From contig JAAPAO010000082.1 in the NCBI GenBank assembly GCA_013115145.1, forward strand, positions 23,492 to 87,491: DNA of 64,000 nucleotides, read 5' to 3'. The translations under genes and the position numbers were made by a program. Shown one piece after another: positions 1 to 64,000 of this stretch; position 1 is the first letter of the stretch, and every line of letters starts with the position of its first letter. The stretch comes from Perkinsus chesapeaki ATCC PRA-425. Lineage: Eukaryota; Protista; Perkinsozoa. Under the pieces are notes generated by a model. That model searched no databases. It saw only the letters and a list, made by a program, of their open reading frames with translations, and was not told the origin of the DNA.

Positions 1-3000
1 AGTGGTAGCACTGAGCTCGTTATCCAACACCAAGATGAGGTCAGCACTTTTATACTTCTGGCCATCCTTAGGCTTATGGGTGACATCATAACAGTTGAGG
101 GAGATGAAGTAGTAGAATTGCTTATAGACAAATCGGCCATTATTCAGACTGGCGCACGAGTAGTACTTGTCGGCAATCTAAAAATCAGTGATGACGAGGG
201 CGACTACCAGCTGCCTCGTCCCACCTTAACAACCTTTAAGTTCTTCTGTGTGGCCGTTGCCGAGATGAACTGCAGCTCATCAGCGAACTTCACTGCTTTC
301 TGGTCAACGTAAACTCCCTTAACATGCTTGTATATGGACGAGTACGTCACCGGTGCCTTTGGATTCTCGAGCTTGCCCCACCAGGCAGCCAGCTGTCTGG
401 CGTGATAGTGGTTATCACAAATGATCTGCAGTGAATCATAAAATTGCGAATAGCATCTACAAGCTCACATCAACATCAGTCTTCTCTCCGGAGCCGTCAT
501 CCTTCTGGCACCTCGCTCTGACCATATAAGCATTGCTCTCCGTGTTGATTGCCCTGTGAGGCTCTGGAGCATTCTGTACCGGATCGCAGGTGTACTGGAA
601 CTCGGAGACGGCGTACTTATAGGAGCCTGCGGGGTTATTGGCGAAGTTAACCTAAAACCACCAGTACCAACGGCAACGCCTCAAACCGCCGCCTCCGCCT
701 ACTGTGAGCCATCTCTTATGCTCCTCCCTCTCGACAACTGATGTCACCACACCAGGGGTGCTTTGGGCCACAGAGCTCGGCTGGTAAGATGCCTTAACGA
801 GTGTGAAGTCGTTCTTGATGTTATCGATCCGGACAGCTGCGCAGGACTTTAGGATATCCTTCGACACGGCGAGCTCCGAGATGACGGCCTTGCCCCATGT
901 AGCGATTTGGAGAGCGGACTCTTGCTCACGACACTCAATCTCGAGAACCTGGTAAAAATACATACCAACAAGGCGGAGCGAAGCAGCTGACCTGCTCCTG
1001 GCATGCGCACTGCATGACCAAGGTGCCCATGGGGGTGTATTGTGGTGGTGACATGACATGAGAGCAGGAGTACTGGTTCATGCCTTGCCCAGGTGTCAAG
1101 GTCTCCAGCTCGATACCAGCTCCCACTATAGAGGCTCGGCCAAGCTTCATGGGTGTAAGGGAACCCTTCACTGTCACACGCTCACATGAGCGACAAACCT
1201 TCTCTTGGACAACAACCTGATAGATAGGAGAACTCAGTGCATGACGAGTGGGAGGAGGCATATTGCCGTCAAGTAACACAGTAATAGAATAACAGAGCAA
1301 TACGACGCATTTGATACGGGCAGTGAACCTATTTGGCGATGTTTTAACCTCCACCACACTAGAGTGCCGCGCTCCCCTGACAAACTTACAGTTGCATCAG
1401 TCTTGCCACAGAATGGTCCACGGCTGACCTCGATAGCTGTGCTAGCTGATCCACAGACCATTTCAACCTGATGATGAAGAGCATCATCATCATCACAATT
1501 GACAATGCCTTCCTTGCTCATACCTTAGCCTCTTGTTTAGCCCTCTCATCATGGCAGTCCATAGGGATAACGAACTCATCCAGGCGGATCTCTGGGTTCT
1601 GCTTAAGTGCCCCACAGGTCAGCATCCTCATCTCACTTCCCCTTTGAACCTGACAACCCTGTGACCAGCGCAACCCAGCAGCAGCATCAGCATCGACCTA
1701 CATAGAGATAGCGAATCGATTGAGTTAAGGTAACCGAGAGCATCTGGACACTCCAACCAGCGGCACCACCAACGCGGCAGGCATTGCACGCTCCCGGAGG
1801 AGTCTTCACCGCGACCTGAGCAACGCAGTGCACTCGTTGGCTGTCATCTCTTTGGCTCCTTCTCACTTCATTACGAACGTATCCTCCCCATTGGGTGGCG
1901 AACAGGACAGCGGCATCAGCCACCGAGCATGTCACAACAACCCTTTGAGATTGACAGTTCATAGACAGCCTGTAGATGCCGTTATCGTTCTCAGGAGGAG
2001 CGGTCACGGCGTCACACTGCAGGTTCATACTGGTATGTTGCTTAGCCTAACTCAGCCATCAGCAGCAGCAGCTATTCCCTACCCCTGCTCCCCTTACCCT
2101 GATATATCTCTTAGTGACCATCATACTGGAGAATCCACCACCGGCACCAGCATTCTCCACCCAGGCCTGCTCTAGAGTGTGGACGGCTTGATCCATACCC
2201 ATAACCACACTGCGGCAGGATTGAATAAAGTCGTTGTCCATACGGATTTGAGGGTTCACAAGGCCGCCCCAGCGGTAGGCGAACTCCTTAGCAGCATCAG
2301 GATTGCCGTAAAGGATAGTAGCTTGCTGCCCATCGCAAAGCAACTGAAACAACAATACCATGGGCCCCACTAGACCAGAGCGCTCTTACCGAAATGACGT
2401 ATTTGCCTCCTCTGCTGGCAATGTCAGCAGTGACAGCGTTACAGGTGTGTACAACGACCTTACCATCACTCTTAACCTGATAACGTCACTCCGTCTTTCC
2501 CATGATCAGCAGTTTGCCTGTCTCACCTCAAGGGTCCTTCCTGTGATATCAGCATTAGCGTTATACTGCACCTTAGCTGCCACAACTTCACTGGGGCTCC
2601 CAATACGCAGATTGCCGCCCTGTACAGTGGCATAGGCACCCGCCAGGAGACTTGGATGCATTTCAACCTGACAGCAGCAGCAGACACTTCCGACCTGAAC
2701 CTCAGAGCCCCAGCCTCACCGTTGGTGTCTCTAGCTGGGCCCAGATGATACCGAAGGCTATCGAAGCTGTGACGGTCTTGAAGACGAGCTTCACCTGAGA
2801 TCGTCGACCTGTCTTCGGGGGTTGCTGTATAAGTCATGCTCACCGCAATAGTGTTCTCGAGGCGCTCATCGGTCGAACATTGAAGCGTGATGTAATATCT
2901 GTCGTTGTTGTAAGTAATGGACTCGCTATCACCAGCCAAAGATTTGCAGAAGTATGCAGAGCCACGCACCTGCTGGAGTAGGTTAAAAGATACTAAACCC

Positions 3001-5519
3001 ACTGGACAAGAACTCACAGTGAAGATTCTTCCAACGACAACTTCAGAAAAGGTATCCTTGTACACCGCCGCGGTATCTATCTTCTCCACCTGTCCATTTC
3101 CCAGATCAGCCCCCTCGACATGATCAAGATCGACCTGAGCATTAGATGTTACCAGCGGCGGCGGGCGCCGTAGCAGGCTTCGTATCAGACTCACAGCGAC
3201 GTATTGCCCCCACTGTTGGGCGAACTCCTTAGCATCCTGTTCACGTGGGAACACAACCGCGACCTCGTCCTTGCGCTCCTCCATGGAGGGTGTGTCACCG
3301 CGGAAGGACAGCCCGCAGCGTGAACGTACAGCATACTCATCTAGATAAGAGATGTTCGTAACACCGCCGCTGGTATCGAGATAACCTACTCTGATTTCTC
3401 TGCTCAATGGTCCAAACCTTTTGACAGGCATACCACTCCTTATCCTCTGGCTTAGGCACAGCTTCAGAGCCAACCTGACAGCATGACAGTGACTCATACA
3501 GGGCAGAGTCTAAGACCCACCGCCTTACCGCGAGCCACAAAAGCCTCACACGATCTTCACGAGTGTATCTTTCCCTAGTAGCCGACACCAGTGTGTAGTT
3601 ACCACTGGCATCGTTGTTGTCAGAAGGTGTTATCTCAACTCGGAGAGCTGGTGTTAGTAGGGCCAGATTAACCGATACCTGAAAGGCAGCAGCATTACCG
3701 ATACGTTATTGATTAAGTCTGTAGTGGTACGTCAGCTCTAAAGTGGGACCACTCCGACGAGAATCTCCAGGCATCATCTTCATTTTTAAAACGTATGTCG
3801 ACTGTTCTCCCTTGGCATTTAGCATTGACGATGTAAGCATCACTCGCACTCTCATAGACAACAGGCTCGCTGACTCTGTCACATCTAATGCTGCCGTCGA
3901 GACCTTCCACCTACACCAGACACAACCGTCGTGGGCCTGCGCGGCGCTGGTGGGGAACGAAAAGATACTGGAACCGAGAATCGAACTCGGGACCTACTGC
4001 GTGTTAGGCAGTCGTCATAACCAACTAGACCATTCCAGCGTTGAAATCCCTTCAAACCAACCCCATGCCATCAGACAGCGCTCACCTCGATCCGCCCACG
4101 GACTGTCCTCTTCCCCATATCGCATACATCAGATGTTGCCCTCAGCAGCTTACCCGAGAAGTCACCAGAGAATACGCCCTCACTGCGGGACACCAAGTCA
4201 TCAGGAACCTGTGACAAGTACAATGACCCATCAACTGCAACAACACCTCATCTCACCTCGTTGAACCCACCCCAGCGAGCGGCAAACTTTTCAGCGAGCT
4301 CCTCGGTGGAGAAGCTTAATTCGACATCCTTCTTGTCACACGCAGCCTTCACGGTCTTCCCTTCGATATCAGTGGCACCAGCACAGTTGTACTTCTCCCC
4401 AGACTTCATCTGAAACGGGAAGTCCGCCGGGGAATCGCCCAGGTCTCGTCTACAGTGAGAATGCGCTCTGTGGCCATTTCAGTGGAAGGATTGATGCGGA
4501 CCTCGGCGGAAGCGATGTCAGATCCTTCCAGTTCAGAGGAACGGATCGGTACCTTACAAAAAGGACTGCACCAACACCCGTGGTAACATCAGAGCTTACT
4601 CCGAGCGTGTATCCTCCCCAGTTAGCCGCAAACATCATTGCGGTAACTCTCTCTTTAAAGAGGAGGTTGAATGTCTTAGTGACTTTATTTTGATATGTGC
4701 AGGTGAGCTCAACTTCGTAACGTCCGTTTGCTTCGATCGGACCGGAGTGGACTTTGTCACAATATACTTTATATTCTCCCAGCTGAACTTATGTACTTAC
4801 GATGCGTCTACTCAGAATTCACTTACTGTTATGCGTCGTAGCCGAGGGCTGCTATTACGATAGCGAATGTACGATAAGCCAAGGTTCTGCTTCACCCCCC
4901 ACCACTGAGCGAAAGGGTTCTTCTCCACCCAAGCATCAGCAACAACTTCGGGTGATACGGTGAACTGAAAGGGAACCATTTCGGGGAAGCCATCAAGACA
5001 AAGCAGTCGTTTGTTCCACTAAACTTACGGTCTCGAGATCTCCCCAAAGGACGGCGAATTGAAGTGCTTCGTACTCGTGCTCGAAATACAGGCTTGTTGG
5101 TTTCCCATCACAAGTAGTTGATACTTTATAAGCAGACTCTTCAGTATCCCTTCTTGGAGATTCAGTAACAGCCTCGCATTTATGCTTGGAGAAGCTACCG
5201 CGGTTATCACCAACGAGCTGAGGTATGAAGTGAGACAAGTCGATAAGCCTCGATGGCTCACCCATATAGTTCTTGGCTCCTTCTGTGTATTGACAGCCTT
5301 CGCGATCTGTGAGGCTTCCTTAACGCTATGGATGACCACTTTATTGCATTGATCCACGATATCATCCGCGATCTAAAGGTGAGGGGTAACAAGACCATAC
5401 ATCACAGTTCCCACGTGTTCTGTAATGGGTACATCTTGAGCTCCAACAAGTACTCCGAGAGAAAACAGCGCAGCAGCTGCCCTTTTCCAGCCAGGGTAAG
5501 CGGCCTTTGTGGAATTCAT
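1..5519 (-). CDS. Large secreted multi-exon protein with >=10 tandem copies of an unrecognised Cys-pair / FAxxWG domain (runs off left edge)
   Basis: ATG at 5519 gives MNSTKAAYPGWKRAAAALFSLGVLVGAQDVP (signal-peptide-like). Splicing short GT-AG introns joins the minus-strand ORF fragments in frame (e.g. introns 4783-4826, 4209-4256, 3911-4085). Recurring motif xCxxV..YxVxxxC..LxFxxExxAxxFAxxWG. Confidence 0.8.
3966..4039 (-). tRNA. trnV-AAC: tRNA-Val(AAC), intron-nested
   Basis: Reverse complement GCTGGAA TG GTCTAGTTGGTTATGAC G ACTGC CTAACAC GCAGT AGGTC CCGAG TTCGATT CTCGG TTCCAGT A folds as a cloverleaf with anticodon AAC, followed by TTTT. Confidence 0.95.
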
Positions 5520-5731
5520 TGTAAATAACAAGGCAAGTGTTTTTAAACAGGCTAACACTACAGAAGAAATCGTTCAAAAGACAGGGATCGCGCGAAAGAT
5601 CAATGGAAAAATATCGCTCAGAATAATACTCAGATCTTGCGCACTTCGTCCGGCTTAATCTTTCTGAACGGAGCCAGCGCGCTCCGGAAAATAATTTTCT
5701 TGAAAGTGTCAACGATGCTGACTCAACATTT

Positions 5732-6403
5732 ACTACACCTTTTTAACATCAAGTTCACACTTAGGAACATCAATTTCGTCTCAACGGGCGAACTTGAGCG
5801 CACGAATCTGAAACGGAGATGCTGTTTATGCTGTTTTATGCGCGTGTTGTTTGCTATCCATTACCTTGCAACCGGTAACTATTTTTGGTGTGTGGGCCGC
5901 AGTCTGTCAGCCTCTAACGCTACCGCCTGGCGTTATGTGAAAGACGGTTTGACTGCCATTTCTAGTCACGCCGTTGTTTCCCGTTGGATTCCTTGGTACG
6001 ACCAAATCGCCATAATCGACATGGAGAGGAAATTCCGTCTCCACCGGCGAATGCCCCTGGTGGTAGGGGCAATCGACGGCTCGCAGATACCTGTGTTGAG
6101 CCCGGCCGTTCATGAAGAGGCGAATATTAATAGAAAAGGCTTCAGCAGTGTCAATCTGATGGCAGTTTGCGACTACAACGGTCTTTTCCGATATGTCTGC
6201 TGCCGTTGGCCGGGTTCGACCCATGATTAGTCGAGCGAACTTGACTGTACTAACTTATCTTGTCGAACTTGAGAATCCTATGGCGAAATTGAAAATCCTA
6301 ACGGTGAAGTGGATCTTCCCGTTTCAGATTCGTGCGCTCAAATTCGCCCGTTGAGACGAAATTGATGTTTCTAAATGTGAACTTGATATTAAGAAGGTGT
6401 AGT
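5732..6403. repeat. 85-bp inverted repeat pair (5732-5816 / 6319-6403) bracketing the transposase fragment
   Basis: Manual alignment gave 80/85 identity, and all five differences are transitions. Confidence 0.9.
5830..6230 (+). mobile_element. PIF/Harbinger-type DDE transposase fragment (truncated)
   Basis: Translation includes FAIHYLATG, VVGAIDGSQIP, NRKGFSSVNLMAVCD and RWPGSTHD followed by a stop. These are Harbinger/HARBI1 (DDE_Tnp_4) motifs; the C-terminal catalytic part is missing. Confidence 0.85.
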
Positions 6404-9121: not shown

Positions 9122-11257
9122 CTAGCTACTTCTGGTGGATGCCTTCGTGCTAGCGTCACCGATGTTACTAAACGAGACACTGATAGTTGTGCTCGTCTCA
9201 GATGGTATCGATCTACCAAGGGGGGTACTGCTGCTATCAGTAGTCGTGTCTCTAGCACGTGTGGTAACATTCGAGGACCCCAGAGCGGTGGTCACGTAGG
9301 CGCCAGTCGTAGTTACGTCGTCCTCGTTAATGGAACGCATTGGTGATGTCACGATCGTTGTAGTTTCTGTTCTTGCTAATTCAGAAGTAACTAATATAGC
9401 AGTTTCACTCGAATCGCCCAAGAATGTGGCGGTGGTGATGGTCGTTGGGTCCACAATCTGCTCTGTTACGGTTGTATTACTGGTCGACGATGAACTACTC
9501 CCTGTGCTTGTAGTAGTGATCTGGCTGTAAGTAGTAGTGGAAGGTGGAGCAGTGGCTGCCACTGTAGAAGCAGATGAGATGATGGTAGAGGTAGAAGGTG
9601 AATTAGTGGTTGAAGTTGTAGAAGCCGATGCGTTGGTAGCGGTCGAGCGTGAAGCAGTAGTTAAAGCTGCAGGAGAAGATGAGCTGTTTGTAGTGGTCGA
9701 AGGTGAACCAGTAGTTACCATCGTAGAAGCAGATGAGCTGTTTGTAGTGGNNNNNNNNNNNNNNNNNNNNNNNNNNNNNNNNNNNNNNNNNNNNNNNNNN
9801 NNNNNNNNNNNNNNNNNNNNNNNNNNNNNNNNNNNNNNNNNNNNNNCTATTGTAGTGGTCGAAGGTGAACCAGTAGTTACCATCGTAGAAGCAGATGAGC
9901 TGTTTGTAGTGGTCGAAGGTGAGCCAGTAGTTACCATCGTAGAAGCGGATGAGTTGTTTGTAGTGGTCGAAGGTGAACCAGTAGTGACCATCGCAGAAAC
10001 AGATGAGTTGGTAGAAGTTGTTGATGATGAAACACTTACTGTTGTAGTGGTGGTAAATCCCTCTGTGGTATTAGTAGAAGCACCCGTATAGTTCACTACG
10101 GCTGCACTACTCGTCGTTTGGGATGTTCCAGTTGGGCCAGTAGAATCCCTAGACGTCGTCGAGCTCATAACCGTCAAAGTCTGTGTAGTAAATTGAGTCG
10201 TCCCGGGCGGTCCTGGGGAGGTCGTAGTGTATAGAGTCTTGTTAGTTACAGGACACGAGCACTGCGTAGGCGAGGCCGGAGTAGTCGTAGCGGGTTCTCG
10301 TAGTTGTAGCCAGTAGTCATAGGTTACGAATCTCGGTGCGAGGAAGACTTCCTCATCAGGGCATCCTCTGAGACAATTAACAGCAAGTCCGCAAAACTGA
10401 CAAATGTCTGCATGTATCCCTACCTCTTCTCGAGGGATGTATCATAAGGTGACTCGCGATAGAATCCAGGCATGCACCAGCAGACTTGTCGCTCCGAATA
10501 CCAATTGTATGTACACCACTCCGGAGGGCTCTCCTCAGGGTACCCTGCACCAACGGCGTACAAATGTGATACAAGCTTCGGCGCCCAGCTTACATGAAAG
10601 TACCCATGGTACGTCTCCTTCGGTAGAAGAGCAGATGGTATCGTAGGAAGGTCCATAAGGGGGTAGAGCCACGTACCTAGGCTGCTTCTCGTAGCATCTA
10701 ACCACAATCATATACGACCAAAAACATCAACGGTAGACAACGTACAGCCAATCACGATTCTTGCTGCCATGACGGTTACCCTTGTCGTTAGGATCGAGAA
10801 CACAGTCTACCACAGCAGAGATGGGCAACTGCTGGAGTGAGTGGTGGACCCGTACCGTATTTTGCAGGAGCGTCTTCATATCCTCGATCATCTTGATGCC
10901 ACTCATGGAGCCTTATACACAACCTGTAATAGCGGCGCCATCGTAGCCCGGCTACCCAAATCAGCCTACTGTTTGATTTTCTTCCCTCTGGCACCATATG
11001 TCTCTGCGTTTCGCCACTTTCCATGACAGTAGGATTTACCATTGGCCTTTACCTTTCCTCGACCATGGGCATAAAGATTGTAGTCTACAGTATCAGATAC
11101 TGCCAGTGCCTTGGGAAGCCCTGAGAAAGACATCACATTGCGATAAGCATAGAAGTGGCTTACACTTCCAGCGAGCTTCATCAGGTCGCTTGAACCCCTT
11201 AACCACCGACATGATTATTGCGCAGCCAGCAACCGACAGTAACGTAATGCTTCTCAT
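9122..11257 (-). CDS. Secreted mucin-like protein: Cys/aromatic N-terminal region plus long Ser/Thr-rich tail
   Basis: ATG 11257 gives MRSITLLSVAGCAIIMSVVKG (signal-like). Short Cys-containing exons (CWCMPGFYRE, TQCSCP) precede a >350-aa S/T-rich exon. Exon structure is approximate. Confidence 0.6.
9670..10000 (-). repeat. 54-bp coding tandem repeat (18 aa, TTGSPSTTTNSSSASTMV) with an assembly gap
   Basis: Unit gtagtggtcgaaggtgaaccagtagttaccatcgtagaagcagatgagctgttt recurs on both sides of the N run at 9751-9846. Confidence 0.9.
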
Positions 11258-11763: not shown

Positions 11764-13584
11764 TCAAAAAGTCGCTCCACTGCACCGAAGGGCTTCCTTC
11801 GTATAACGTTTACAGTTGGAGAAGCCCATGTCTTCGGAGAAATCTCCACCATAGTAGCACCGGACCCACTCCCAATCGTGAATTGCGTACAGTGACCCAT
11901 CGACATCAAAAAGAGAGTCGAACTGTTCTTGACTGAGGATCCCCTCAGCAACTGTGCGCGTTTTCAAGTCATTAAGTAAGTTCCAAGAATACTCAATACC
12001 ACCCGAAGGATCGGGATACGAAGTAGAATCGTAGGCGCACATGGAGAGCTTCCAGCAATACTGATCAAGAGTACAAGAACCTTCCAACATGATGGTGATC
12101 TTAGCCTTTAAATTCTCCCATCCAGGTTGAGTACAAACTTCACATTGTTCAGTCATCATGTAATTCATACGATATAAAAGATCATCTTTATAATCTCCAT
12201 CAATAGCATTACGATAAAGCATCATAGTAGCATGATCAGCATATTGCATTATATATTGAGTACCAAGAGGACTATGAGCATCAAGGGTAAAGTCGAACAG
12301 CAGCGAGTTGGGCGCATACCCCATTTTCGCGGTAACGTTACTTCTTATCTGCTGCGCAGTGAGTAACGTCTTTAGGATGTCATCAGGGCTCATGCGCTCT
12401 GCATCAAAGCTCAGTCCTATGGGAGCAACCTGCTGCATATCTTCTGCCATTATATGATCCTCCAAGTACTGCTCGAATGTGCTCAAGAATTGGAGCATTA
12501 GAGAGCCGTTGCGGGTCTTGGTATCACCATAAGTGAGCCATAACCTTTGGTCATTACCGGTGCGTTGGCGCCATTCTTTCATAAAAGGTAGTAGCTTCTC
12601 TGCATCATGAATTCGGTCTGGATTGGTGTTATCAGCAATGTTAACATAAACATCACCAGAGTTCCATAATTTACCAATATCAGAGGCACCAAAGTTAATC
12701 AATGATGGATCACCCTTCCTCCAATAATCTTGAGACCATGAGTATGTACCAAACCTACGCTCATTCGTTACATTTCGCGTTGGTGCAATATCGGTGGTCG
12801 TCGAAGGTGTTGTAATTTCAGGTGCAATGGTAGTATCACACGGCTGAAAAGACATATCCATGGCGATTCTCCAAAGTTCCTCTTACTGTTGTGCGGCGTA
12901 GGCGCGCATTGCCTTTCTCGTAATGAATATGCAATTCTGGTTGAGGGTTCTGCTTCAAGCCCTGCCACTGAGCGAAAGGATTCTTCTCCACCCAATCGTC
13001 GGCAACAACTTCGGGTGATACGGTGAACTGAGGGGAATAATTTCGGGGAAGTCATCAAGACAAAGCAGTCGTTTGTTCCACTAAACTTACAGTCTCGAGA
13101 TCTCCCCAAAGGACGGCGAATTGGAGTGCCTCGTACTCGTGCTCGAAATACAGGCTTGTTGGTTTCCCATCACAAGTAGTTGATACTTTATAAGCAGACT
13201 CTTCAGTATCCCTTCTTGGAGATTCAGTAACAGCCTCACATTTATGCTTGGAGAAGCTACCGCGGTTATCACCAACGAGCTGAAGGATAAAGTGAGACAA
13301 GTCGATAAGCCTCGATGGCTCACCCATATAGTTCTTGGCTCCTTCTGTGTATTGACAGCCTTCGCGATCTGTGAGGCTTCCTTAACGCTATGGATGACCA
13401 CTTTATTGCATTGATCCACGATATCATCCGCGATCTAAAGGTGAGAGGTAACAAGACCATACATCACAGTTCTCACGTGTTCTGTAATGGGTACATCTTG
13501 AGCTCCAACAAATACTCCCAACGAGATTAGAACGGCCAGAGCAGTTTGCTTCTGGCTCTTAAATGTGGAGGAGGTCAAATTCAT
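11764..13584 (-). CDS. Chimeric secreted protein: repeat-domain-gene 5' exons spliced to a GH-like TIM-barrel domain
   Basis: ATG 13584 gives MNLTSSTFKSQKQTALAVLISLGVFVGAQDVP. Exons are homologous to 4827-5519. Phase-0 intron 12844-12886 (ACA|GTAAG...TTTCAG|CCG) joins in frame to the 12843-11764 exon containing RFGTYSWSQDYW...GLSFDAE. Confidence 0.8.
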
Positions 13585-28906: not shown

Positions 28907-30691
28907 TTACCAGAGTAACGCAGCCGAGGCAGTTGTTGAAGTACTGTCGCAGTCACGACACATGCATCTGTCTACATCCTGGTGGTAGTCTTTAACACAG
29001 TTGGAGAACCCCATTTGGCGGGAGAACTCATCACCATAATAACATCTTACCCATTCCCAGTTATGAATAACATACAATGAACCGTGAATATCGTAAAGGT
29101 AGTCGAATTGTTCTTGAGTGAGAATGCCGTCGGAAACTGTACGAGCCTTTAACTCATTAAGCAAGTCCCAAGCATATTCGATACCACCAGAGGGATCGGG
29201 ATACGAATCGGTACCATAGGCACACATGGAGAGCTTCCAGCAATACTGATCAACGGTACAAGAACCTTCCAACATGATGGTGATCTTAGCCTTTAGATTC
29301 TCCCATCCAGGTTGAGTACAAACTTCACATTGTTCAGTCATCATATAATTCATACGATATAAAAGATCATCTTTATAATCTCCATCAATAGCATTACGAT
29401 AAAGCATCATAGTAGCATGATCAGCATATTGCATTATATATTGAGTACCAAGAGTATTCTTTTGTCCTTCTATAGCAAAATCAATAAATAATGATCCAGG
29501 AGCATAACCCATCTTATTAGTAACATCCTCCTTCATCTCTTGAGCCTTCAGCAAAGTCTTCTTGATATCTTCGGGCTCCATATGTTCCACATCGAAACTC
29601 AAACCGACTGGAGCAATGGCTTGCATATCCTTAGCCGTGATGTAGTCCTCCAAGTACTTCTGGAACGTATCCACGAACTCGAGCATACGAGATCCCTTGC
29701 CGGTCTTGACATCCCCGTATGTGAGCCATAACCTTTGGTCGTTACCGGTGCGTTGGCGCCATTCTTTCATAAAAGGTAGCAGCTTCTCTGCATCATGAAT
29801 TCGGTCTGGATTGGTGTTATCAGCAATGTTAACATAAACATCACCAGAGTTCCATAATTTACCAATATCAGAGGCACCAAAGTTAATCAATGATGGATCA
29901 CCCTTCCTCCAATAATCTTGAGACCATGAGTATGTACCAAACCTACGCTCATTCGTCTCGTTACTAGTAGTAGTGGTAGGTGTCGGTGTTGTCGTCACCT
30001 CTGTGGTGGCTGTCGTTAAAGGCGACGTTGTCCCATGAATCGTGGAAGCAACAGTCGTTGTAGTTGGCAGTTCAGTCGTAGTGGTGACAGCCTCCCTGGT
30101 CGTCATGACAGACCCAGATGTCGTCTGAGTGCTGGCTGCAGCACTCGACGTTGATGGTGGAGTAGTGCCGCTTGTGCTGGTCGTACTGGTCGTGGTAGCA
30201 GGAGCCTCTGTGGTCGTCATCGCCTGTGACGTAACAGAGTGGCAGGAACATGGGGCATTGGTGCCTGAGCAGACACTTGGAACTGTCCAGTATTTGCAGT
30301 AGGATCCCGGGTGCAGTGATGCACAATACGAGTCTCCTTCAGTGCAACCGGTTTCGGTTGTTGTAGATGTCGCCGCAGTGGTGGGCGTGGTCACCGAGTG
30401 CACGGAAGCTGTCGTGCTACTTTTCCTTGTAGTTGTGGTGGCCGGACCTTCGGTCGTGCCCTGTGGGGTGGTGCTGCCATCGCAAGAACACTCAGTGTTA
30501 TCAGACTGGCATCTGCTGGGAGTCTCCCAGTACTTACAGTACGACCCCGGATGAATTGAGGCGCAGAAAGCATCCCCAGAGGGACAGTCAGTAGTGGCAG
30601 CAGAAGTGAGAGAGTATAATGATAAGACGGAGAGATAAGATATTATAAAGCTTTTCATAGTAACAGAAGCGAAAAGGAACTGCTTAGCCAC
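28907..30691 (-). CDS. Secreted GH-like TIM-barrel protein with two 6-Cys modules and Thr-rich linkers (intronless)
   Basis: Hydrophobic signal, two C-x6-C-x8-C-x8-C-x6-C-x-C modules, Thr-rich linkers and a conserved domain with GLSFDVEH. The GH assignment is inference. Confidence 0.85.
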   Translation of the reverse strand: MAKQFLFASVTMKSFIISYLSVLSLYSLTSAATTDCPSGDAFCASIHPGSYCKYWETPSRCQSDNTECSCDGSTTPQGTTEGPATTTTRKSSTTASVHSVTTPTTAATSTTTETGCTEGDSYCASLHPGSYCKYWTVPSVCSGTNAPCSCHSVTSQAMTTTEAPATTTSTTSTSGTTPPSTSSAAASTQTTSGSVMTTREAVTTTTELPTTTTVASTIHGTTSPLTTATTEVTTTPTPTTTTSNETNERRFGTYSWSQDYWRKGDPSLINFGASDIGKLWNSGDVYVNIADNTNPDRIHDAEKLLPFMKEWRQRTGNDQRLWLTYGDVKTGKGSRMLEFVDTFQKYLEDYITAKDMQAIAPVGLSFDVEHMEPEDIKKTLLKAQEMKEDVTNKMGYAPGSLFIDFAIEGQKNTLGTQYIMQYADHATMMLYRNAIDGDYKDDLLYRMNYMMTEQCEVCTQPGWENLKAKITIMLEGSCTVDQYCWKLSMCAYGTDSYPDPSGGIEYAWDLLNELKARTVSDGILTQEQFDYLYDIHGSLYVIHNWEWVRCYYGDEFSRQMGFSNCVKDYHQDVDRCMCRDCDSTSTTASAALLW

Positions 30692-37250: not shown

Positions 37251-38560
37251 TCAAACAGGTGGGATGGATCCTCGTCTCCTTGGTTCGATAGCACTTGGAG
37301 GGACATCTACTACCCTATACCCTTGTAACCATTCGCCAAAGTCCCCCGTGGATACTACTTTAGTCAACCGCGGCCGCTTACCACTGCTACCCTTGGTCGA
37401 TCGGCAATATGCCACTACTTGCAGTACCAATAAACATACCAACATGAAGGGAACTGGCTCGAATGATCTGTGATCAGCAGCACAGGAAAGGACGTAGAGG
37501 ATTGGGGCAGCCAGAGCACTGCAGATGTATTTAGCAGTAGCCGATACACTTTTGAAGACGTAGGCAGTAATCCAACCATTAGCCACTATTACCGTAAAGG
37601 CCATCCACGACTGAAAGTTCATACCGATTTCTTCTAGGCAATCACATACTTCCGAACCCAGACAAGATGCAGCCAAGTTGGCCGTGTCACACTGTGGCTT
37701 ATCTCCTAGTATATTGGCGGGGCCATTGATGATGAGAAGGCCTATGAAGGTGAAGAGTAAACTGATAAGCTTGAGCCGACCAGCTGTGGCATAGAACCCT
37801 CTGGAGTCACCTTTAATGAGATATTCAAGATAGACTGCACACGCTGACGACAGCAATGCCTTGGAGACACTCCACGGTATAGCACTGGCATCGACACCGT
37901 CACTAGGGAGCTCAGTTATGGTAAAGGCAATAGCACACACAACAACACCTATTAGGGATGCGCGGTTATCGAGACTGTGGCCTAAGATGTAGTATGACAA
38001 TAAAGCTACCAGCAGGAGCCTAGTCTGGCTTACCACTGACATGGTTGGGCTGTTACCGTGATCTATTGCCTGTAGTGTAGAGAGATCGCTTATGGTGTAA
38101 AGCACAGCTAGAGGTGTCATTAACTTGATATCGTTCCAACTAATAATGTCCCCTCTCTTATGGTGCCGTCTGTTCGTCAATACCTCTGCTGTATATGCCA
38201 CTATTGTACCAATAAGATGGTCCCCCATCATGAATGCTGCTATAGAGTAGGGATAGGCAGCTCTAGAGGCAACTAAATGCCCGTTACTAAAGGTATCAAG
38301 TATTGTGGTCTTGGAGCTATCAACAGCCCATGGTCCAATGACGCATACTATAAGGCAAGTTGCTAGGGTGAGATATGCTGTTATTGTTGATGGTATTGAC
38401 ATTACAAAAGAGAGGATGCTAACCAAAACAATCGCTATGCAGTCCCGTGATGGAACCTGTCACATTTATTTCGCCATGCAAGACATTCAGCTTGGTCAGA
38501 ACTGGCTGGTATGGCCCGGCGTAACTCGTAGATCTCGCTACGCCCAAATGATCGATAATC
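37251..38560 (-). CDS. Nucleotide-sugar transporter (SLC35A-like)
   Basis: Multiple hydrophobic helices, PLAVLYTISD...VVSQTRLLLVALLSYYILG, KYI. The 5' exon is approximate. Confidence 0.8.
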
Positions 38561-44988: not shown

Positions 44989-46605
44989 TTACTCGGCCCG
45001 GCATTGAGCCGCTAGGCTGTGGTAGTTGTTGCAATTGGAGAAGCCCATCTCCTTCGAGAAGTCATCGCCATAGGAACAACGGACCCATTCCCAGTCGTGG
45101 ACGGCGTATAATGTACCGTCAATGTCATACAAATGCTCAAACTGGTCTTGGGTCAAAATGCCATCAGAAACTGTACGCTCACGAAGAGTGTTGAGCGTGC
45201 TCCACATATATTCAATACCTCCCTCGGAATTGGGATAAGTAGGTGTATCGTAAGCACACATAGAAAGCTTATGGCAGTAGTCACCTTCAGTACAGGAACC
45301 TTCCAACATGATGGTGATCTTAGCCTTTAGATTCTCCCATCCAGGTTGAGTACAAACTTCACATTGTTCAGTCATCATATAATTCATACGATATAAAAGA
45401 TCATCTTTATAATCTCCATCAATAGCATTACGATAAAGCATCATAGTAGCATGATCAGCATATTGCATTATATATTGAGTACCAAGAGTATTCTTTTGTC
45501 CTTCTATAGCAAAATCAATAAATAATGATCCAGGAGCATAACCCATCTTATTAGTAACATCCTCCTTCATCTCTTGAGCCTTCAACAAAGTCTTCTTGAT
45601 ATCTTCGGGCTCCATATGCTCGGTGTCAAAGCTCAGACCAATGGGAGCAATCGCGGCCATATCCTCAGCCGTTATGGATTTTTCCAGGAACTTCTGGAAG
45701 GTGTCAACGAAAGCAAGCATCCTTTTGCCATCATGCTTCTCGATATCACCATAGGTCAAAAAGATACGCTGGTCATTGCCAGTCACTTCACGCCATTGCT
45801 TCATCCAAGGCAACAATTTCTCTTGGTCGTGAATTCTATCGTAGTTGGTCTGATCCGCAACGTTCACATACACATCGCCGGAATTCCACAACTTTCCCAT
45901 GTCAGAGGCACCGAAGTTCACCAGAGTATCATCATTTTTGCGCCAGTAGTCCTGAGACCAAGAGTAGGTAGCGAAACGGTGTTCGTCTCCGGATGGCTTC
46001 ACAGTGGTGCTCGCGACCTCTGAAGTTGTAGTGGAACCAGTAGTACTTGAGACAGAAGTAGTGGTCGTAGTTTCTAACGTAGGGAACGTGGTTGTCGAAG
46101 GCTCTGCACTCGTCGTTGAAGTATTACTCGCGCTGGCTGTAGACGTAGTGGGAAGAGCAGTGCCACGAGTAGTCGAAGCTGCTTCTGTAGGAACAGTGAT
46201 AGAGGCAGTTGTACTCGGCAATACAGTGGTTGTAGCTCTTAGATGAGTCGTAGTAGAGGGAGCGTTAGTAGACGTAGTTGCAGCGGGCGAAGTACCGACG
46301 GTTGAATGAGGGGTGGTAGAAGGCGGGTGAGCAGTTACAGTGCTCTCACTGCTATCACTTCCGCAGGAACAAGGAAGGGCAACCCCTTGGCAAACTGAAG
46401 GGGCCTGCCAGTATTTGCAGTAGGAACCAGGTAAAGCAGCAGCACAGACTGCATCACCCTGGAAACAATCGTCCGCAGAAACAAGAGCTCCAAAGGAGGC
46501 GGCAAGTAAGCACTTGGTTATCAGACGAGCCATGAATAAAGAAACAGAAACAGGCCAAAGATTAGCTGAAAAGGAAAACCTCACTGACGAACATTCACAG
46601 GCCAC
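44989..46605 (-). CDS. Secreted GH-like TIM-barrel family member, one 6-Cys module (intronless)
   Basis: Signal peptide (likely start at MARLITK), CFQGDAVCAAALPGSYCKYWQAPSVCQGVALPCSC, Thr-rich linker and GLSFDTEH. Confidence 0.85.
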   Translation of the reverse strand: MACECSSVRFSFSANLWPVSVSLFMARLITKCLLAASFGALVSADDCFQGDAVCAAALPGSYCKYWQAPSVCQGVALPCSCGSDSSESTVTAHPPSTTPHSTVGTSPAATTSTNAPSTTTHLRATTTVLPSTTASITVPTEAASTTRGTALPTTSTASASNTSTTSAEPSTTTFPTLETTTTTSVSSTTGSTTTSEVASTTVKPSGDEHRFATYSWSQDYWRKNDDTLVNFGASDMGKLWNSGDVYVNVADQTNYDRIHDQEKLLPWMKQWREVTGNDQRIFLTYGDIEKHDGKRMLAFVDTFQKFLEKSITAEDMAAIAPIGLSFDTEHMEPEDIKKTLLKAQEMKEDVTNKMGYAPGSLFIDFAIEGQKNTLGTQYIMQYADHATMMLYRNAIDGDYKDDLLYRMNYMMTEQCEVCTQPGWENLKAKITIMLEGSCTEGDYCHKLSMCAYDTPTYPNSEGGIEYMWSTLNTLRERTVSDGILTQDQFEHLYDIDGTLYAVHDWEWVRCSYGDDFSKEMGFSNCNNYHSLAAQCRAE

Positions 46606-49572: not shown

Positions 49573-50865
49573 TTACTGGATTTTGCACTGGTTTGACAGT
49601 TCGTTGTACTGACTGATACAGTTCTTGTAACCCATTTGGCGGGAGAACTCATCACCATAATAACATCTTACCCATTCCCAGTCATGAATAACATACAATG
49701 AACCATGAATATCATAAAGGTAGTCGAATTGTTCTTGAGTGAGAATGCCATCGGAAACTGTACGAGCCTTTAACTCATTAAGCAAATCCCAAGCATATTC
49801 GATACCACCAGAGGGATCGGGATACGAATCGGTACCATAGGCACACATGGAAAGCTTCTTACAGTACTTCCCAGCCTCGCAGGAACCTTCCAACATGATG
49901 GTGATCTTAGCCTTTAGATTCTCCCATCCAGGTTGAGTACAAACTTCACATTGTTCAGTCATCATATAATTCATACGATATAAAAGATCATCTTTATAAT
50001 CTCCATCAATAGCATTACGATAAAGCATCATAGTAGCATGATCAGCATATTGCATTATATATTGAGTACCAAGAGTATTCTTTTCTCCTTCTATAGCAAA
50101 ATCAATAAATAATGATCCAGGAGCATAACCCATCTTATTAGTAACATCCTCCTTCATCTCTTGAGCCTTCAACAAAGTCTTCTTGATATCTTCGGGCTCC
50201 ATATGTTCCACATCGAAACTCAAACCGATTGGAGCAATAGCCCGCATATCATTAGCCGAAATGAAGTTCTTGAGATACTCTCCAAATGTATCTACGAACT
50301 GGGCCATACGATTGCCGTTTGAAGACTTGATGTCGCCGTAGGTCAACCAGATCCTCTCTGTGTTACCGGTGCTCTTACGCCAGTCCTTCATCCAAGGAAG
50401 GAGCTTCTCCTGGTTATGTATGCGGTCATAGTTAGTCTGATCGGCAACGTTGACGTACACATCGCCCGAATTCCATAGTTTTCCCATATCAGAGGCACCA
50501 AACTGGGTGAGACTTTTATCACCGGACCTCCAATAGTCTTGGGACCAGGAGTAAGTGCCAAATCTCACATCAGAAGTAACAGGAGGCCTCGTCGTGGCTG
50601 CAGTAGGCCTGCTTGTCGTTGGCACCGGCTTCTTAGTGGTGGTCTTATCCAAGAACTTTGTGCTGGTAGTAGGACCACTTCCACCGCAAGAGCAAGGAGT
50701 ATTAGATCCCTGACAAACGCTAGGGGTCTCGTAGTACTTGCAGTAAGAGCCAGAAACAATACTGGCACAGTACTGATCACCAGCACTGCAATCAACAGCA
50801 GCAGATGATGACACTCCCAACAGGAGCGCGCATAGAACACTGGATAAGGTACGTCGGCCAGACAT
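49573..50865 (-). CDS. Secreted GH-like TIM-barrel family member, short linker (intronless)
   Basis: Signal peptide, CSAGDQYCASIVSGSYCKYYETPSVCQGSNTPCSC and GLSFDVEH. Confidence 0.85.
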   Translation of the reverse strand: MSGRRTLSSVLCALLLGVSSSAAVDCSAGDQYCASIVSGSYCKYYETPSVCQGSNTPCSCGGSGPTTSTKFLDKTTTKKPVPTTSRPTAATTRPPVTSDVRFGTYSWSQDYWRSGDKSLTQFGASDMGKLWNSGDVYVNVADQTNYDRIHNQEKLLPWMKDWRKSTGNTERIWLTYGDIKSSNGNRMAQFVDTFGEYLKNFISANDMRAIAPIGLSFDVEHMEPEDIKKTLLKAQEMKEDVTNKMGYAPGSLFIDFAIEGEKNTLGTQYIMQYADHATMMLYRNAIDGDYKDDLLYRMNYMMTEQCEVCTQPGWENLKAKITIMLEGSCEAGKYCKKLSMCAYGTDSYPDPSGGIEYAWDLLNELKARTVSDGILTQEQFDYLYDIHGSLYVIHDWEWVRCYYGDEFSRQMGYKNCISQYNELSNQCKIQ

Positions 50866-58399: not shown

Positions 58400-60114
58400 T
58401 CACATTGGGGCTGAAGCCCTCCGAGCCTCGAGTGCTCTACCATAAATTGCTCTCGATGGCAACCAAGATATATACTCTCCAGCCACACTGTCAGCAGCTG
58501 TTATAGAGGGATATTCTGAACGTAGGAATGTTGGTTGACGCCTTATCTCCGTGGCCCTTGCCGAAGGCTGCGCTAGCTCTGCCTCGTAGGTTGCAAGCAC
58601 CTCCCACCGAGAACGGACATTATCGTGGAGGGCTTTGGTTAATGAGCTGTTCTGAAAGCAGTCATAAATAGGGACTGCTAGTTGACGAAAAAAACCCAGC
58701 TGAATCTGAAGATACGCTTTAGGGCAGTCCGGCCTGGCCGGTATCGCCTTCGGCGGCACTTTTCCAGCAGCGAAGAACAGGTCCCTTTCATGGCCAAACT
58801 CCTCCAACACCATCGCAGACCACTTTAACATAGCAGTGCGTGTGCGAGTTGGGTTACTTATATCAGCAGCGTGAAGCAGTATTGTCAGTTTGTCGCTGAT
58901 GGAGCATTTACTGTACTCGAGGCCCTTCTCAACCCACATATTGTGCAACTGCATATCTGTTCCCAAAATCATGTACTCTACTAGCTTCATATTCTCTTCG
59001 CCAATAAACTGCACAACGCCTGTCTCCCTCAAAAGCACATCGGTCTCTCGAGCATGCATTGTCTCCAACGGATGACTGTCGTTCTCCTCTCCCTCTCCGT
59101 TAAATATAGCAAACCAGTTAGAGTAGCCTGGATGTCGTAGATCATGCCCCAATGCCGCGCAGTAGGCCGTAATGGCCTTCAATGGAGGTAGGCCAGGCTC
59201 CTGTTCTGATATGAGCTCGTATAGGGCCAGAGTCACGTCAGCCGCGTGGATGGGATTGTGAAAAGGAGCGTTCTTATACCCCAATCTCGCTGCCTTCGCA
59301 TATCGTACAAGACACGCTCGTAAATCCCTGAAACGGATTACAAAATAACAACTTAACCTTTGCGGTGAAGAATTTACCCAAAAATTTCCGCTCTGCCGGT
59401 TGCCACGCACGAACAACCTTACACAGTAAAACTCTATGACAAGTAGCAACAACTGTTTTGAGGTAGACGACCTATTTAAGGGAACGAGTTTCAAAACGTA
59501 TAAAGATGCGTTATCCGGTATTCATTTCGGCCGAATGACAGCTGCGCAGGACCGAGGGCCAAGTGCACTTCTAACGTATTGCATATTCTCAATTACGTCA
59601 TATTTAACGAGCCTCGTTTTATGGCAAATCCGTCCTCTGCTCCATCTGAGAAATAGTCCGCGAAACTCAAGAGATTTGGAAATTTTTGGAAATTTTCCAG
59701 AATTTTCCTGAAGTTTCCTGGATTTTCCCGGATTTTTCCCTGCGCCGACATCACGATTTTTCACCGAGGACTGTATTGATGATGCACTCTTCAAGGATCA
59801 AATAGACAAGGAAATGGAATACGGGTAGTAGTTGCATACCTCTTCCACTCTGGCGGCTCATCTGTGATCGAATCGAGGACGTCATCGAATATTGTCATGG
59901 CAACAACCTGCATTATATCGAATCTATTGCTGAAATTTGAATCTGCATAGTCGAATATATCAAAGCCGGGCGCTAGGAAGGTAGACAGAGGCGGTAGGGA
60001 AGCCGGGGACAAAGATGGTCTAATATAATAATGACAATACGCTAGTGGTCGTATTAAAGGTGCATACCTGCTCATGACGGATGTCCCCCGTGTGGCAGTA
60101 GCACTATCGGTCAT
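58400..60114 (-). CDS. Class I cyclic-nucleotide phosphodiesterase (copy 1)
   Basis: PFHNPIHAADV, GHDLRHPG, LETMH, TDMQLH, LHAADISNP and IQLGF. It may extend to hydrophobic exon(s) near 60265-60462. Confidence 0.9.
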
Positions 60115-63619: not shown

Positions 63620-63756
63620 AATGATGATGAACTGTATTTAATGGTGATGACTATTGGTAATACTTCAAGATATGATCTACACCATTGAACACCTAATCTT
63701 CAAGCAACCTCTATCTTTCACACCTGTAGCTGTATACTATACTACTATAAAATATA

Positions 63757-64000
63757 ATAATCACAAAGGATCAATAACCAAACTTACTAATAATTACAAA
63801 GGACCAAGAACCAAACTTACTAATAATCACAAAGGACCAAGAACCAAACTTACTAATAATTACAAAGGACCAAGAACCAAACTTACTAATAATTACAAAG
63901 GACCAAGAACCAAACTTACTAATAATTACAAAGGACCAAGAACCAAACTTACTAATAATTACAAAGGACCAAGAACCAAACTTACTAATAATTACAAAGG
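63757..64000. repeat. 33-bp tandem satellite, about 7 copies, running off the right edge
   Basis: Unit aaacttactaataattacaaaggaccaagaacc. Confidence 0.95.

What the first reader, a model, noticed from the sequence alone, without database searches (positions are those of the whole stretch)
1..5519. Secreted protein built from >=10 divergent copies of an unrecognised Cys-pair / F-x-x-E-x-x-A-x-x-FA-x-x-WG domain
Seen: after splicing, the repeats read KCEAV..AYKVSTTCDGKPTSLYFEHEYEALQFAVLWGD; YCDKV..RYEVELTC..NLLFKERVTAMMFAANWGGY; KAACDKKDVELSFSTEELAEKFAARWGGF; RCDRV..AYIVNAKCQGRTVDIRFKNEDDAWRFSSEW; ACQKV..EYAVRSRC..AVVFPREQDAKEFAQQWGQY; FCKSL..RYYITLQC..KLVFKTVTASIAFGIIWAQ; TCNAV..KYVISLLCDGQQATILYGNPDAAKEFAYRWGG; QCDAV..IYRLSMNC..AAVLFATQWGGY; SCSHV..QCACQEQVLEIECREQESALQIATWGK; TCDPV..AYMVRARC..IICDNHYHARQLAAWWGK. 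Another repeat is cut by the window edge. The copies are too divergent to see at DNA level. Inference: the strand-F-xxE-xx-A-xx-F-helix end recalls the last strand and helix of PH-like folds (RanBD/EVH1), but here it is extracellular with a probable disulfide. It may be a lineage-specific surface or adhesin module.
Basis: partly seen in the sequence, partly recalled or inferred. Interest (0 to 1): 0.75.

Follow-up and report, generated by a model that had tools for sequence, protein, structure and literature searches.

The report
Perkinsus secreted 14-module repeat protein
A shellfish parasite of the genus Perkinsus carries an intact 31-exon gene for a probably secreted protein of about 1,770 residues, built from 14 copies of a small cysteine-pair domain found only in Perkinsus and matching no described family; its function is untested.

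Summary
On the minus strand, one GT-AG-spliced frame runs from the ATG at 5519, over the left window edge, to a stop 1,545 bases beyond it. My model has 31 exons, 1,769 aa and no internal stop; 29 of 30 introns are phase 0.

After a signal-peptide-like exon come 14 modules, not 10. Each is a 33-60-aa spacer plus a 50-90-aa core (C..V, Y.V...C, h.h.F, A..FA..WGG). A helical, Gln/Met-rich tail follows.

A profile built only from a paralogue on another contig finds cores nowhere else in 72 kb, apart from one duplicated exon. That paralogue is collinear module by module.

An exhaustive HMMER scan of 1.84 billion proteins gave only fragmentary hypothetical proteins of P. marinus and P. olseni, plus unnamed assembly fragments. 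Pfam gave only sub-threshold DUF7029 hits, on 2 of 19 cores.

AlphaFold models the core confidently as a beta-meander plus C-terminal helix. Fold searches put C-terminal halves of PH domains on top, but at Z 4.6 or less, which is within noise.

Most likely this is an extracellular scaffold or adhesin. Secretion and the disulfide are inferred, and there is no expression evidence here. The scan also read this stretch in another window (s1-225045).

The parts
5406..5519 (-). Exon 1: ATG at 5519 and a signal-peptide-like N-terminus. It has Lys/Arg residues, a 14-residue Ala/Leu/Val-rich hydrophobic run, then V-G-A before Q-D.
   Evidence: Sequence read and gene model. Paralogue B has a homologous hydrophobic N-terminus. 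The exact donor is uncertain (33- or 42-nt intron).
5262..5372 (-). Spacer exon Lk0
   Evidence: Phase-0 GT-AG introns on both sides. Conserved with paralogue B.
5029..5217 (-). Core R1, single exon
   Evidence: B-only profile, i-E 7.8e-15. AlphaFold core model pLDDT 83.7. All 4 differences from the duplicated copy at 13094-13261 are synonymous.
4827..4964 (-). Spacer exon Lk1
4600..4782 (-). Core R2, single exon
   Evidence: i-E 4.6e-11
4454..4552 (-). Spacer exon Lk2 (33 aa)
   Evidence: Hand-curated from the DNA. Same length and pattern as the B exon at C3203:6474-6572.
4257..4409 (-). Core R3, single exon
   Evidence: Weak DUF7029 hit, E 0.037.
4086..4208 (-). Spacer exon Lk3
3966..4039 (-). 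tRNA-Val(AAC) gene on the same strand, inside the unusually long 175-nt intron 8 (3911-4085)
   Evidence: ARAGORN; Rfam RF00005 at 64.5 bits, E 1e-12; intron limits
3731..3910 (-). Core R4, single exon
   Evidence: i-E 3.7e-17. Best DUF7029 hit, 20.6 bits against a cut-off of 27.
3529..3678 (-). Spacer exon Lk4
3195..3474 (-). Core R5 in two exons (3390-3474 and 3195-3340), split by the only phase-1 intron
3018..3134 (-). Spacer exon Lk5, followed by an in-frame 48-nt intron
2720..2969 (-). Core R6 in two exons (2844-2969 and 2720-2794)
2527..2667 (-). Spacer exon Lk6
2098..2476 (-). Core R7 (2390-2476 plus the first part of 2098-2343) and spacer Lk7 (about 2098-2247), which is contiguous with it
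1867..2046 (-). Core R8, single exon
   Evidence: i-E 2.4e-14. In-frame 51-nt intron 1816-1866.
1702..1815 (-). Spacer exon Lk8
1390..1658 (-). Degenerate core R8b (exons 1524-1658 and 1390-1467). It keeps the Cys pair but has lost the Trp-Gly-Gly end.
   Evidence: Collinear with B exons C3203:9843-9974 and 10019-10096; DNA
703..1216 (-). Spacer Lk8b and core R9 (exon 992-1216, then exon 703-948, which also carries spacer Lk9)
225..651 (-). Core R10 (exon 469-651 plus the start of exon 225-425) and spacer Lk10
1..177 (-). Core R11, cut by the window edge (exon 177 to -35). Beyond the edge the gene continues with Lk11, R12, Lk12, R13 and the tail, to a stop at -1545 (L005:6455).
   Evidence: Flank fetched

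Best explanation
This is one intact, intron-rich Perkinsus gene. It encodes a protein of about 1,770 aa that enters the secretory pathway and works outside the cell as a non-enzymatic beads-on-a-string scaffold or adhesin, in the cell wall, matrix or secreted material.

Shown:
- An open frame threads 31 exons.
- The plan is a signal-peptide-like exon, then 14 spacer-plus-core modules, then a charged helical stretch and a Gln/Met-rich tail.
- The core is a genus-restricted domain with a conserved Cys pair and a C-terminal A..FA..WGG helix.
- AlphaFold models the core confidently as a short beta-meander packed by that helix.
- The 14-module plan is older than the duplication that gave paralogue B, and both paralogues have orthologues in other Perkinsus.

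Inferred:
- The signal peptide is cleaved.
- The two Cys form a disulfide that locks the small core.
- The spacers hold the cores apart.
- Position-specific conservation means each module has its own partner or place.
- The low-complexity tail mediates self-association or anchoring.
For: Gene model:
- 31 exons, 30 GT-AG introns (median about 50 nt), 29 in phase 0, 1,769 aa, no internal stop.
- The P. marinus annotation XP_002766007 splices four homologous junctions at the same places as my model of B.

Repeats:
-.

Paralogue and orthologues:
- Paralogue B on C3203 is collinear through all modules at 35-59% aa identity. It has the same exon plan and a homologous hydrophobic N-terminus.
- Orthologue fragments of A (64-68% identity) and of B (55-75%) exist in other Perkinsus data.

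Selection:
- R1 differs from its 96%-identical duplicate by 4 synonymous and 0 non-synonymous changes, while flanking introns differ by 5.7%.

Domain:
- The second Cys and one Ala are invariant in 19 cores.
- Core model pLDDT is 83.7, and 88-96 inside the 232-aa P. marinus fragment.

Extracellular setting:
- Signal-like N-terminus in both paralogues.
- A P. olseni family member has poly-Thr, mucin-like linkers.
- No enzyme family was detected in any exon.
- No convincing membrane span. The top hydropathy window apart from the N-terminus lies in a spacer and contains Arg, Glu and Pro.

Further family genes:
- C1435 has at least 7 modules and C1185 at least 3.
Against:
- The signal peptide was judged by eye and by hydropathy only.
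- The disulfide could not be checked in the model, and several cores carry a third or fourth Cys.
- Spacers are modelled poorly (pLDDT below 60). Their mutual homology is not significant.
- Gln-rich tails are also common in nuclear and RNA-binding proteins.
- A few splice sites are uncertain (intron 1, the 173- and 175-nt introns).
- Function is inferred from architecture alone.
Confidence: 0.6

Rival explanations
1. The core is a very divergent member of a described fold or family. It could be an extracellular, disulfide-bearing derivative of the PH-like superfold, with the spacer supplying the N-terminal strands. Or it could be a remote relative of Pfam DUF7029. In either case it would not be a new domain.
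For: PH-domain C-terminal halves make up most of the top 50 rows in two independent VIA-align searches. One used the core alone and one used the 232-aa fragment, aligned over residues 78-150. DUF7029 is the only Pfam family to appear, for R4 (E 4.9e-4) and R3 (E 0.037), over the same profile region 5-49.
Against: - The best Z is 4.4-4.6, below the tool's stated noise level of 7-8.
- Foldseek against the PDB found nothing at E <= 0.001.
- Only 2 of 19 cores touch DUF7029, at 20.6 bits against a cut-off of 27. The 59%-identical B orthologue of R4 does not hit.
- The reverse search with the repeat profile found no non-Perkinsus relatives at all among 1.84 billion proteins.
- The spacer model is of low confidence, so a full seven-strand barrel is not shown.
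Confidence: 0.15
2. The protein is intracellular: a multi-domain nucleic-acid-binding or regulatory protein. The beta-beta-beta-alpha core recalls AP2 and dsRBD-like folds, and the Gln-rich tail recalls transcription factors. The hydrophobic N-terminus would then not be a cleaved signal peptide.
For: AP2 and dsRBD structures appear among the weak fold matches: 3igm, 6sy0, 2gcc and several dsRBDs. The tail is Gln/Met-rich.
Against: - No Pfam AP2 or dsRBD hit at E <= 10 in any of 19 cores.
- The Cys pair is conserved in nearly every module.
- The signal-like N-terminus is conserved in both paralogues.
- A family member has poly-Thr linkers.
- The fold matches are at noise level.
Confidence: 0.1
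3. The stretch is not one working gene. It is either a decaying pseudogene or a string of separate short genes or exon relics.
For: No expression data were obtained here. Public annotations hold only fragments of 63-274 aa. A transposase fragment and a partial duplication lie just upstream.
Against: - A 5.3-kb frame stays open across 31 exons using only GT-AG introns of typical size.
- Internal modules have no start codon or signal sequence of their own.
- The paralogue keeps the same 14-module order.
- Orthologues of both paralogues are conserved in other species.
- All substitutions in R1 are synonymous.
- The public fragments come from short contigs (0.5-8 kb), which explains their size.
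Confidence: 0.08

Closest known systems
Perkinsus marinus hypothetical protein Pmar_PMAR028364 (XP_002766007.1, 232 aa), and P. olseni partial hypothetical proteins KAF4686147.1, KAF4727760.1, KAF4732238.1
   Same: They carry the same core and spacer sequences. XP_002766007 is the orthologue of paralogue B, modules 11-13 (62-66% identity by tblastn), and is spliced at the same junctions.
   Different: All are fragments from short contigs, unnamed and unstudied. None shows the 14-module plan, the signal exon or the tail. No paper mentions the P. marinus locus tag.
Pfam DUF7029 (PF22974). It is a domain of unknown function, and from my memory (unchecked) mainly fungal.
   Same: It is the only Pfam model that any core touches. 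The match covers the strand-strand-helix part of the core (profile positions 5-49 of 100).
   Different: Scores are under the gathering cut-off (20.6 against 27 bits), only 2 of 19 cores match, only half of the profile is covered, and no reciprocal hit came from the repeat profile.
PH-like domains (pleckstrin homology, PTB, FERM-C)
   Same: A beta-meander capped by a C-terminal amphipathic helix that carries a conserved Trp. PH chains dominate the weak structural matches.
   Different: Known PH-like domains are cytosolic, lack disulfides and have seven strands. Here only four strands plus the helix are modelled with confidence, and Z is 4.6 or less. The Trp sits at the end of the helix rather than the middle (from my own knowledge of PH consensus).
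Modular secreted adhesins of related alveolates, such as apicomplexan TRAP/MIC, LCCL and CRMP proteins (from general knowledge, not tested here)
   Same: A signal peptide followed by many small Cys-containing extracellular modules, in a parasite with an apical complex. The domain repertoire expands within a lineage.
   Different: Those proteins use widespread domains (TSR, vWA, EGF, Apple/PAN, LCCL, Kringle), and many have a membrane anchor. This protein uses one genus-restricted domain, and no membrane span or GPI-type hydrophobic C-terminus was seen.

Membership tests
Pfam DUF7029 (PF22974) | Score at or above the curated gathering cut-off (27 bits) over most of the 100-position profile | tested here: not met
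   The best score is 20.6 bits (R4), then E 0.037 (R3), and only profile positions 5-49 are covered. Only 2 of 19 cores match. The whole-genome scan has no match over the cut-off.
PH-like fold | A seven-stranded, partly open beta-barrel closed by a C-terminal helix, with structural similarity clearly above background | tested here: inconclusive
   Four strands plus the helix align to PH C-terminal halves at Z 3.5-4.6, rmsd 2.2-3.0 A over about 60 residues. The N-terminal (spacer) part is modelled at pLDDT below 60. The tool's stated noise level is Z 7-8.
AP2 / dsRBD-type nucleic-acid-binding domains | A match to the family profile | tested here: not met
   No Pfam hit to AP2 or dsrm at E <= 10 in 19 cores. 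The structural matches are at Z 3.0-3.7 or Foldseek E > 1.
Classical secreted protein (Sec signal peptide) | An N-terminal basic n-region, a hydrophobic h-region of 7-15 residues, and small residues at -3 and -1 of a cleavage site | tested here: met
   Read by eye. There are Lys/Arg residues, then a 14-residue Ala/Leu/Val-rich run, then V-G-A before Q-D. The N-terminus ranks second among 19-aa hydropathy windows. A homologous segment is present in paralogue B. No SignalP run was possible, and cleavage is not shown.
The new Perkinsus Cys-pair/WGG repeat family (defined here) | A significant match to a core profile built from an independent gene | tested here: met
   The B-only profile hits ten modules of this gene at i-E 4e-17 to 5e-3 and nothing else in 72 kb, apart from the duplicated R1 exon.
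Single multi-exon gene, as opposed to separate genes | A continuous spliced transcript | not testable with these tools
Indirect support comes from the open frame through 31 exons and homologous splice junctions in the P. marinus annotation.

The most novel reading that the evidence does not exclude
The spacer exon and the core exon together fold into one domain of about 110 aa. That domain would be an extracellular, disulfide-locked offshoot of the PH-like superfold, repeated 14 times. It would be the first PH-like barrel used as a secreted tandem structural or adhesive module, and it would have been invented within Perkinsozoa.
Probability: 0.1. Interest if true: 0.7.

Novelty: new variant of a known kind. 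Interest (0 to 1): 0.4.

Why it matters
Perkinsus species cause serious disease in oysters and clams, and very little is known about their surface and secreted proteins.

This work defines a genus-restricted extracellular-type domain family. This genome has at least four genes with it, two of them with 14 modules. It also gives the first full-length architecture; public databases hold only unnamed fragments.

That makes the family a testable candidate for a wall, matrix or host-contact component, and a possible genus-specific marker.

The gene is also a clean example of modular exon structure. Twenty-nine of 30 introns are in phase 0 and most modules are split into a spacer exon and a core exon. 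This helps explain how its 5' exons could be shuffled onto another gene 8 kb away.

For biology in general it is one more lineage-specific orphan domain, which is interesting but not surprising.

Tried and rejected
- Fungal origin. I considered it briefly because of the genome size and the DUF7029 hit. I dropped it when the nearest relatives proved to be Perkinsus.
- Foldseek against the PDB: nothing at E <= 0.001.
- PDB sequence profile search: only noise, E >= 0.48.
- ESM Atlas: no usable hit for the P. marinus fragment or for R4.
- Spacers as degenerate cores: hhalign probability 0.2%.
- A general spacer profile built from paralogue B reaches only E 0.02-0.14 on four spacers of this gene. 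I therefore do not claim that the spacers are homologous to one another, only that each is conserved by position between paralogues.
- A first alignment for the second fold (A3) misplaced the spacers and was discarded in favour of A4.
- The bacterial PKD-like proteins, an ankyrin protein and a 'SNSWGGY' repeat protein in the big search match only part of the profile. I judged them spurious.
- The first automatic gene model read through in-frame introns and overran the stop. I replaced it with a codon-usage-scored model plus hand curation against paralogue B.
- Literature searches found nothing on this family.
- Species-level identity (P. chesapeaki, from earlier notes) could not be checked here. 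Only the genus is supported.


Full report
**What is there**

The window is G000:C3304:23492-87491, in a 41.7-Mb assembly of 3,544 contigs. I fetched 8 kb to the left of the window. The same pattern continues there for three more repeats, then a 275-aa open stretch that ends in a Gln/Met-rich tail and a stop.

**Is the repeat real**

Nine single-exon copies align with an invariant Cys and Ala. The consensus is C..V, Y.V...C, L.F..E..A..FA..WGG.
- As a profile, these copies score individual cores at E 1e-13 to 3e-22 across the whole genome. They also find a second gene on contig C3203 and two smaller loci, on C1185 and C1435.
- As a non-circular test, I built a profile only from eight cores of the C3203 gene and scanned all 2,297 open fragments of 72 kb on both strands. 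Every hit below E 0.01 lies on the minus strand inside this gene, except one: the 96%-identical copy of the R1 exon at 13094-13261.
- No intragenic repeat is visible at DNA level.

**Gene model**

I trained a codon-usage score on blocks conserved between the two paralogues and threaded GT-AG introns through the region. I then curated the weak spots by eye against the paralogue.
- The result has 31 exons and 30 introns. Median intron length is about 50 nt, and two introns are long (173 and 175 nt).
- Twenty-nine of 30 introns are in phase 0.
- The product is 1,769 aa with no internal stop. The ATG is at 5519 and the stop is 1,545 bases left of the window.
- The exons were concatenated only inside that local script, to count stops and to scan hydropathy. 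All searches used single exons by reference or database proteins.
- Intron 1 (33 or 42 nt) and the two long introns are the least certain.

The NCBI model of the P. marinus fragment XP_002766007 joins four consecutive exons at junctions homologous to mine. That is independent support, though only from an annotation.

**Architecture**

Exon 1 encodes a typical signal-peptide-like start: basic residues, a 14-residue hydrophobic run, and small residues before Q-D. Fourteen modules follow. Each is a spacer of 33-60 aa plus a core of 50-90 aa.
- In most modules the spacer and core are separate phase-0 exons.
- In some modules an intron splits the core, or the spacer-core intron is missing.
- R11 and R12 have AFAG and GFGG in place of WGG.

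After R13 come a charged, probably helical stretch and a Gln/Met-rich tail. There is no hydrophobic C-terminus and no convincing membrane span.

The spacers are conserved position by position between the paralogues and share a loose pattern. A spacer profile is not significant across positions, and hhalign sees no relation between spacer and core.

**Relatives**

Paralogue B (C3203, from 5510) is collinear with this gene through all modules at 35-59% identity. It has the same exon plan and a homologous hydrophobic N-terminus. Each core is closer to the same-numbered core of B than to its neighbours; R1, for example, is 50% identical to its B counterpart and 17-33% to other cores of its own gene. 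The 14-module array therefore predates the gene duplication.

An exhaustive HMMER scan of 1.84 billion representative proteins with a 19-core profile returned 15 proteins at E <= 0.001.
- Ten are true relatives. One is a P. marinus hypothetical protein, two are representatives of P. olseni partial hypothetical proteins (three GenBank entries in all), and seven are unnamed fragments from public-run assemblies.
- Five match only part of the profile: bacterial PKD-like repeat proteins, an ankyrin protein and a simple repeat. I judged these spurious.
- By tblastn, three fragments are orthologues of this gene (64-68% identity) and five are orthologues of B (55-75%). The duplication therefore also predates the divergence of these Perkinsus species.

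The identities to P. marinus and P. olseni proteins fit a third Perkinsus species. Earlier notes of this scan say P. chesapeaki, which I could not check.

The C1435 gene has at least seven cores and the C1185 gene at least three. A P. olseni member has poly-Thr linkers.

**Known families**

- Pfam gives nothing above threshold for cores, spacers, tail or the database fragments. The only recurring name is DUF7029. It hit R4 at 20.6 bits (cut-off 27) and R3 at E 0.037, over half of the profile. Only 2 of 19 cores hit, and the close B orthologue of R4 does not.
- The PDB sequence profile search and the ESM Atlas gave nothing.

**Structure**

- AlphaFold models the R1 core with the 19-core alignment at mean pLDDT 83.7, as three strands followed by a 12-residue helix.
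- In the 232-aa P. marinus fragment, the core reaches pLDDT 88-96, with four strands plus the helix. Both flanking spacers stay below about 60-66.
- Foldseek against the PDB finds nothing at E <= 0.001.
- The exhaustive VIA-align searches put C-terminal halves of PH, PTB and FERM domains on most of the top rows, with AP2, WGR and ribosomal proteins among them. The best Z is only 4.4-4.6, where unrelated models typically reach 7-8.

It is not evidence of membership. I could not inspect coordinates, so the Cys-Cys distance is untested.

**Selection**

The duplicated 5' segment (4883-5456 against 12946-13518) differs at 11 of 192 non-exonic positions. Within the R1 exon there are four differences, all synonymous. 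The non-synonymous changes cluster in spacer Lk1, near the duplication breakpoint. The numbers are small but fit constraint on the core.

**Interpretation**

The most likely reading is a secreted, non-enzymatic, beads-on-a-string protein of the parasite's wall, matrix or secreted material, built from a genus-restricted, disulfide-stabilised small domain. The supporting points are:
- an open 5.3-kb frame;
- conservation in a paralogue and in other species;
- a signal-like start kept in both paralogues;
- a near-invariant Cys pair;
- mucin-like linkers in a relative;
- the absence of any enzyme signature.

Position-specific conservation of modules argues against a simple spacer rod and for distinct contacts, but that is inference. 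I put 0.6 on this overall reading, and about 0.8 on the narrower claim of a real gene with a new Perkinsus-only domain.

The rivals are:
- a hidden PH-like or DUF7029 relative (0.15);
- an intracellular nucleic-acid-binding protein (0.1);
- a pseudogene or separate short genes (0.08).

**Limits**

- There is no RNA or protein evidence.
- No SignalP or HHpred run was possible.
- The joined spliced protein was deliberately not searched.
- Species identity rests on earlier notes.

Noticed in passing
window 3966-4039 (-): A full-scoring tRNA-Val(AAC) gene lies on the coding strand inside intron 8 of the repeat gene. It fills much of that 175-nt intron, while the gene's other introns are about 45-65 nt.
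   Followed up: partly
window 4883-5456 vs 12946-13518: The 5' part of the gene is duplicated 8 kb upstream at 96% identity. The copied segment runs from within exon 1 through Lk0 and R1 into Lk1. The copy is the front of a chimeric gene already reported by this scan (s1-218116). R1 differs from its copy only by synonymous changes.
   Followed up: partly
window 5637-6230 (+): An open frame with a DDE_Tnp_4 (Harbinger/PIF-type transposase) match, E 8e-7, lies directly upstream of the gene's start. It sits between the gene and its partial duplicate.
   Followed up: no
window 11812-12768, 28997-29956, 45032-45977, 49631-50562: Four copies of a segment of about 950 bp, 79-88% identical, all inside long minus-strand open frames with no Pfam match.
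   Followed up: no
window 1217-1389 (-): A second unusually long intron (173 nt) lies between R8b and spacer Lk8b. No tRNA or Rfam match was found in it.
   Followed up: partly
window 63755-64000: A tandem repeat with a 33-bp period, 98% identical between copies, runs off the right edge of the window.
   Followed up: no
L027 (G000:C3203:13600-15139, +): Just downstream of paralogue B, the exon translations look like a cathepsin-L-type cysteine protease with its inhibitor prodomain. This was read by eye from the gene-model output and not checked against Pfam.
   Followed up: no
window 58400-59494 (-) and 37251-38426 (-): Ordinary neighbours: a cyclic-nucleotide phosphodiesterase (PDEase_I, E 8e-29) and a weak EamA-like transporter match.
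   Followed up: no
L005 3174-4115 (-), about 3.9-4.8 kb left of the window: A 314-aa open frame with a lysine/glutamate-rich tail looks like the C-terminal half of a pescadillo/BRCT-type nucleolar protein. This was read by eye only.
   Followed up: no
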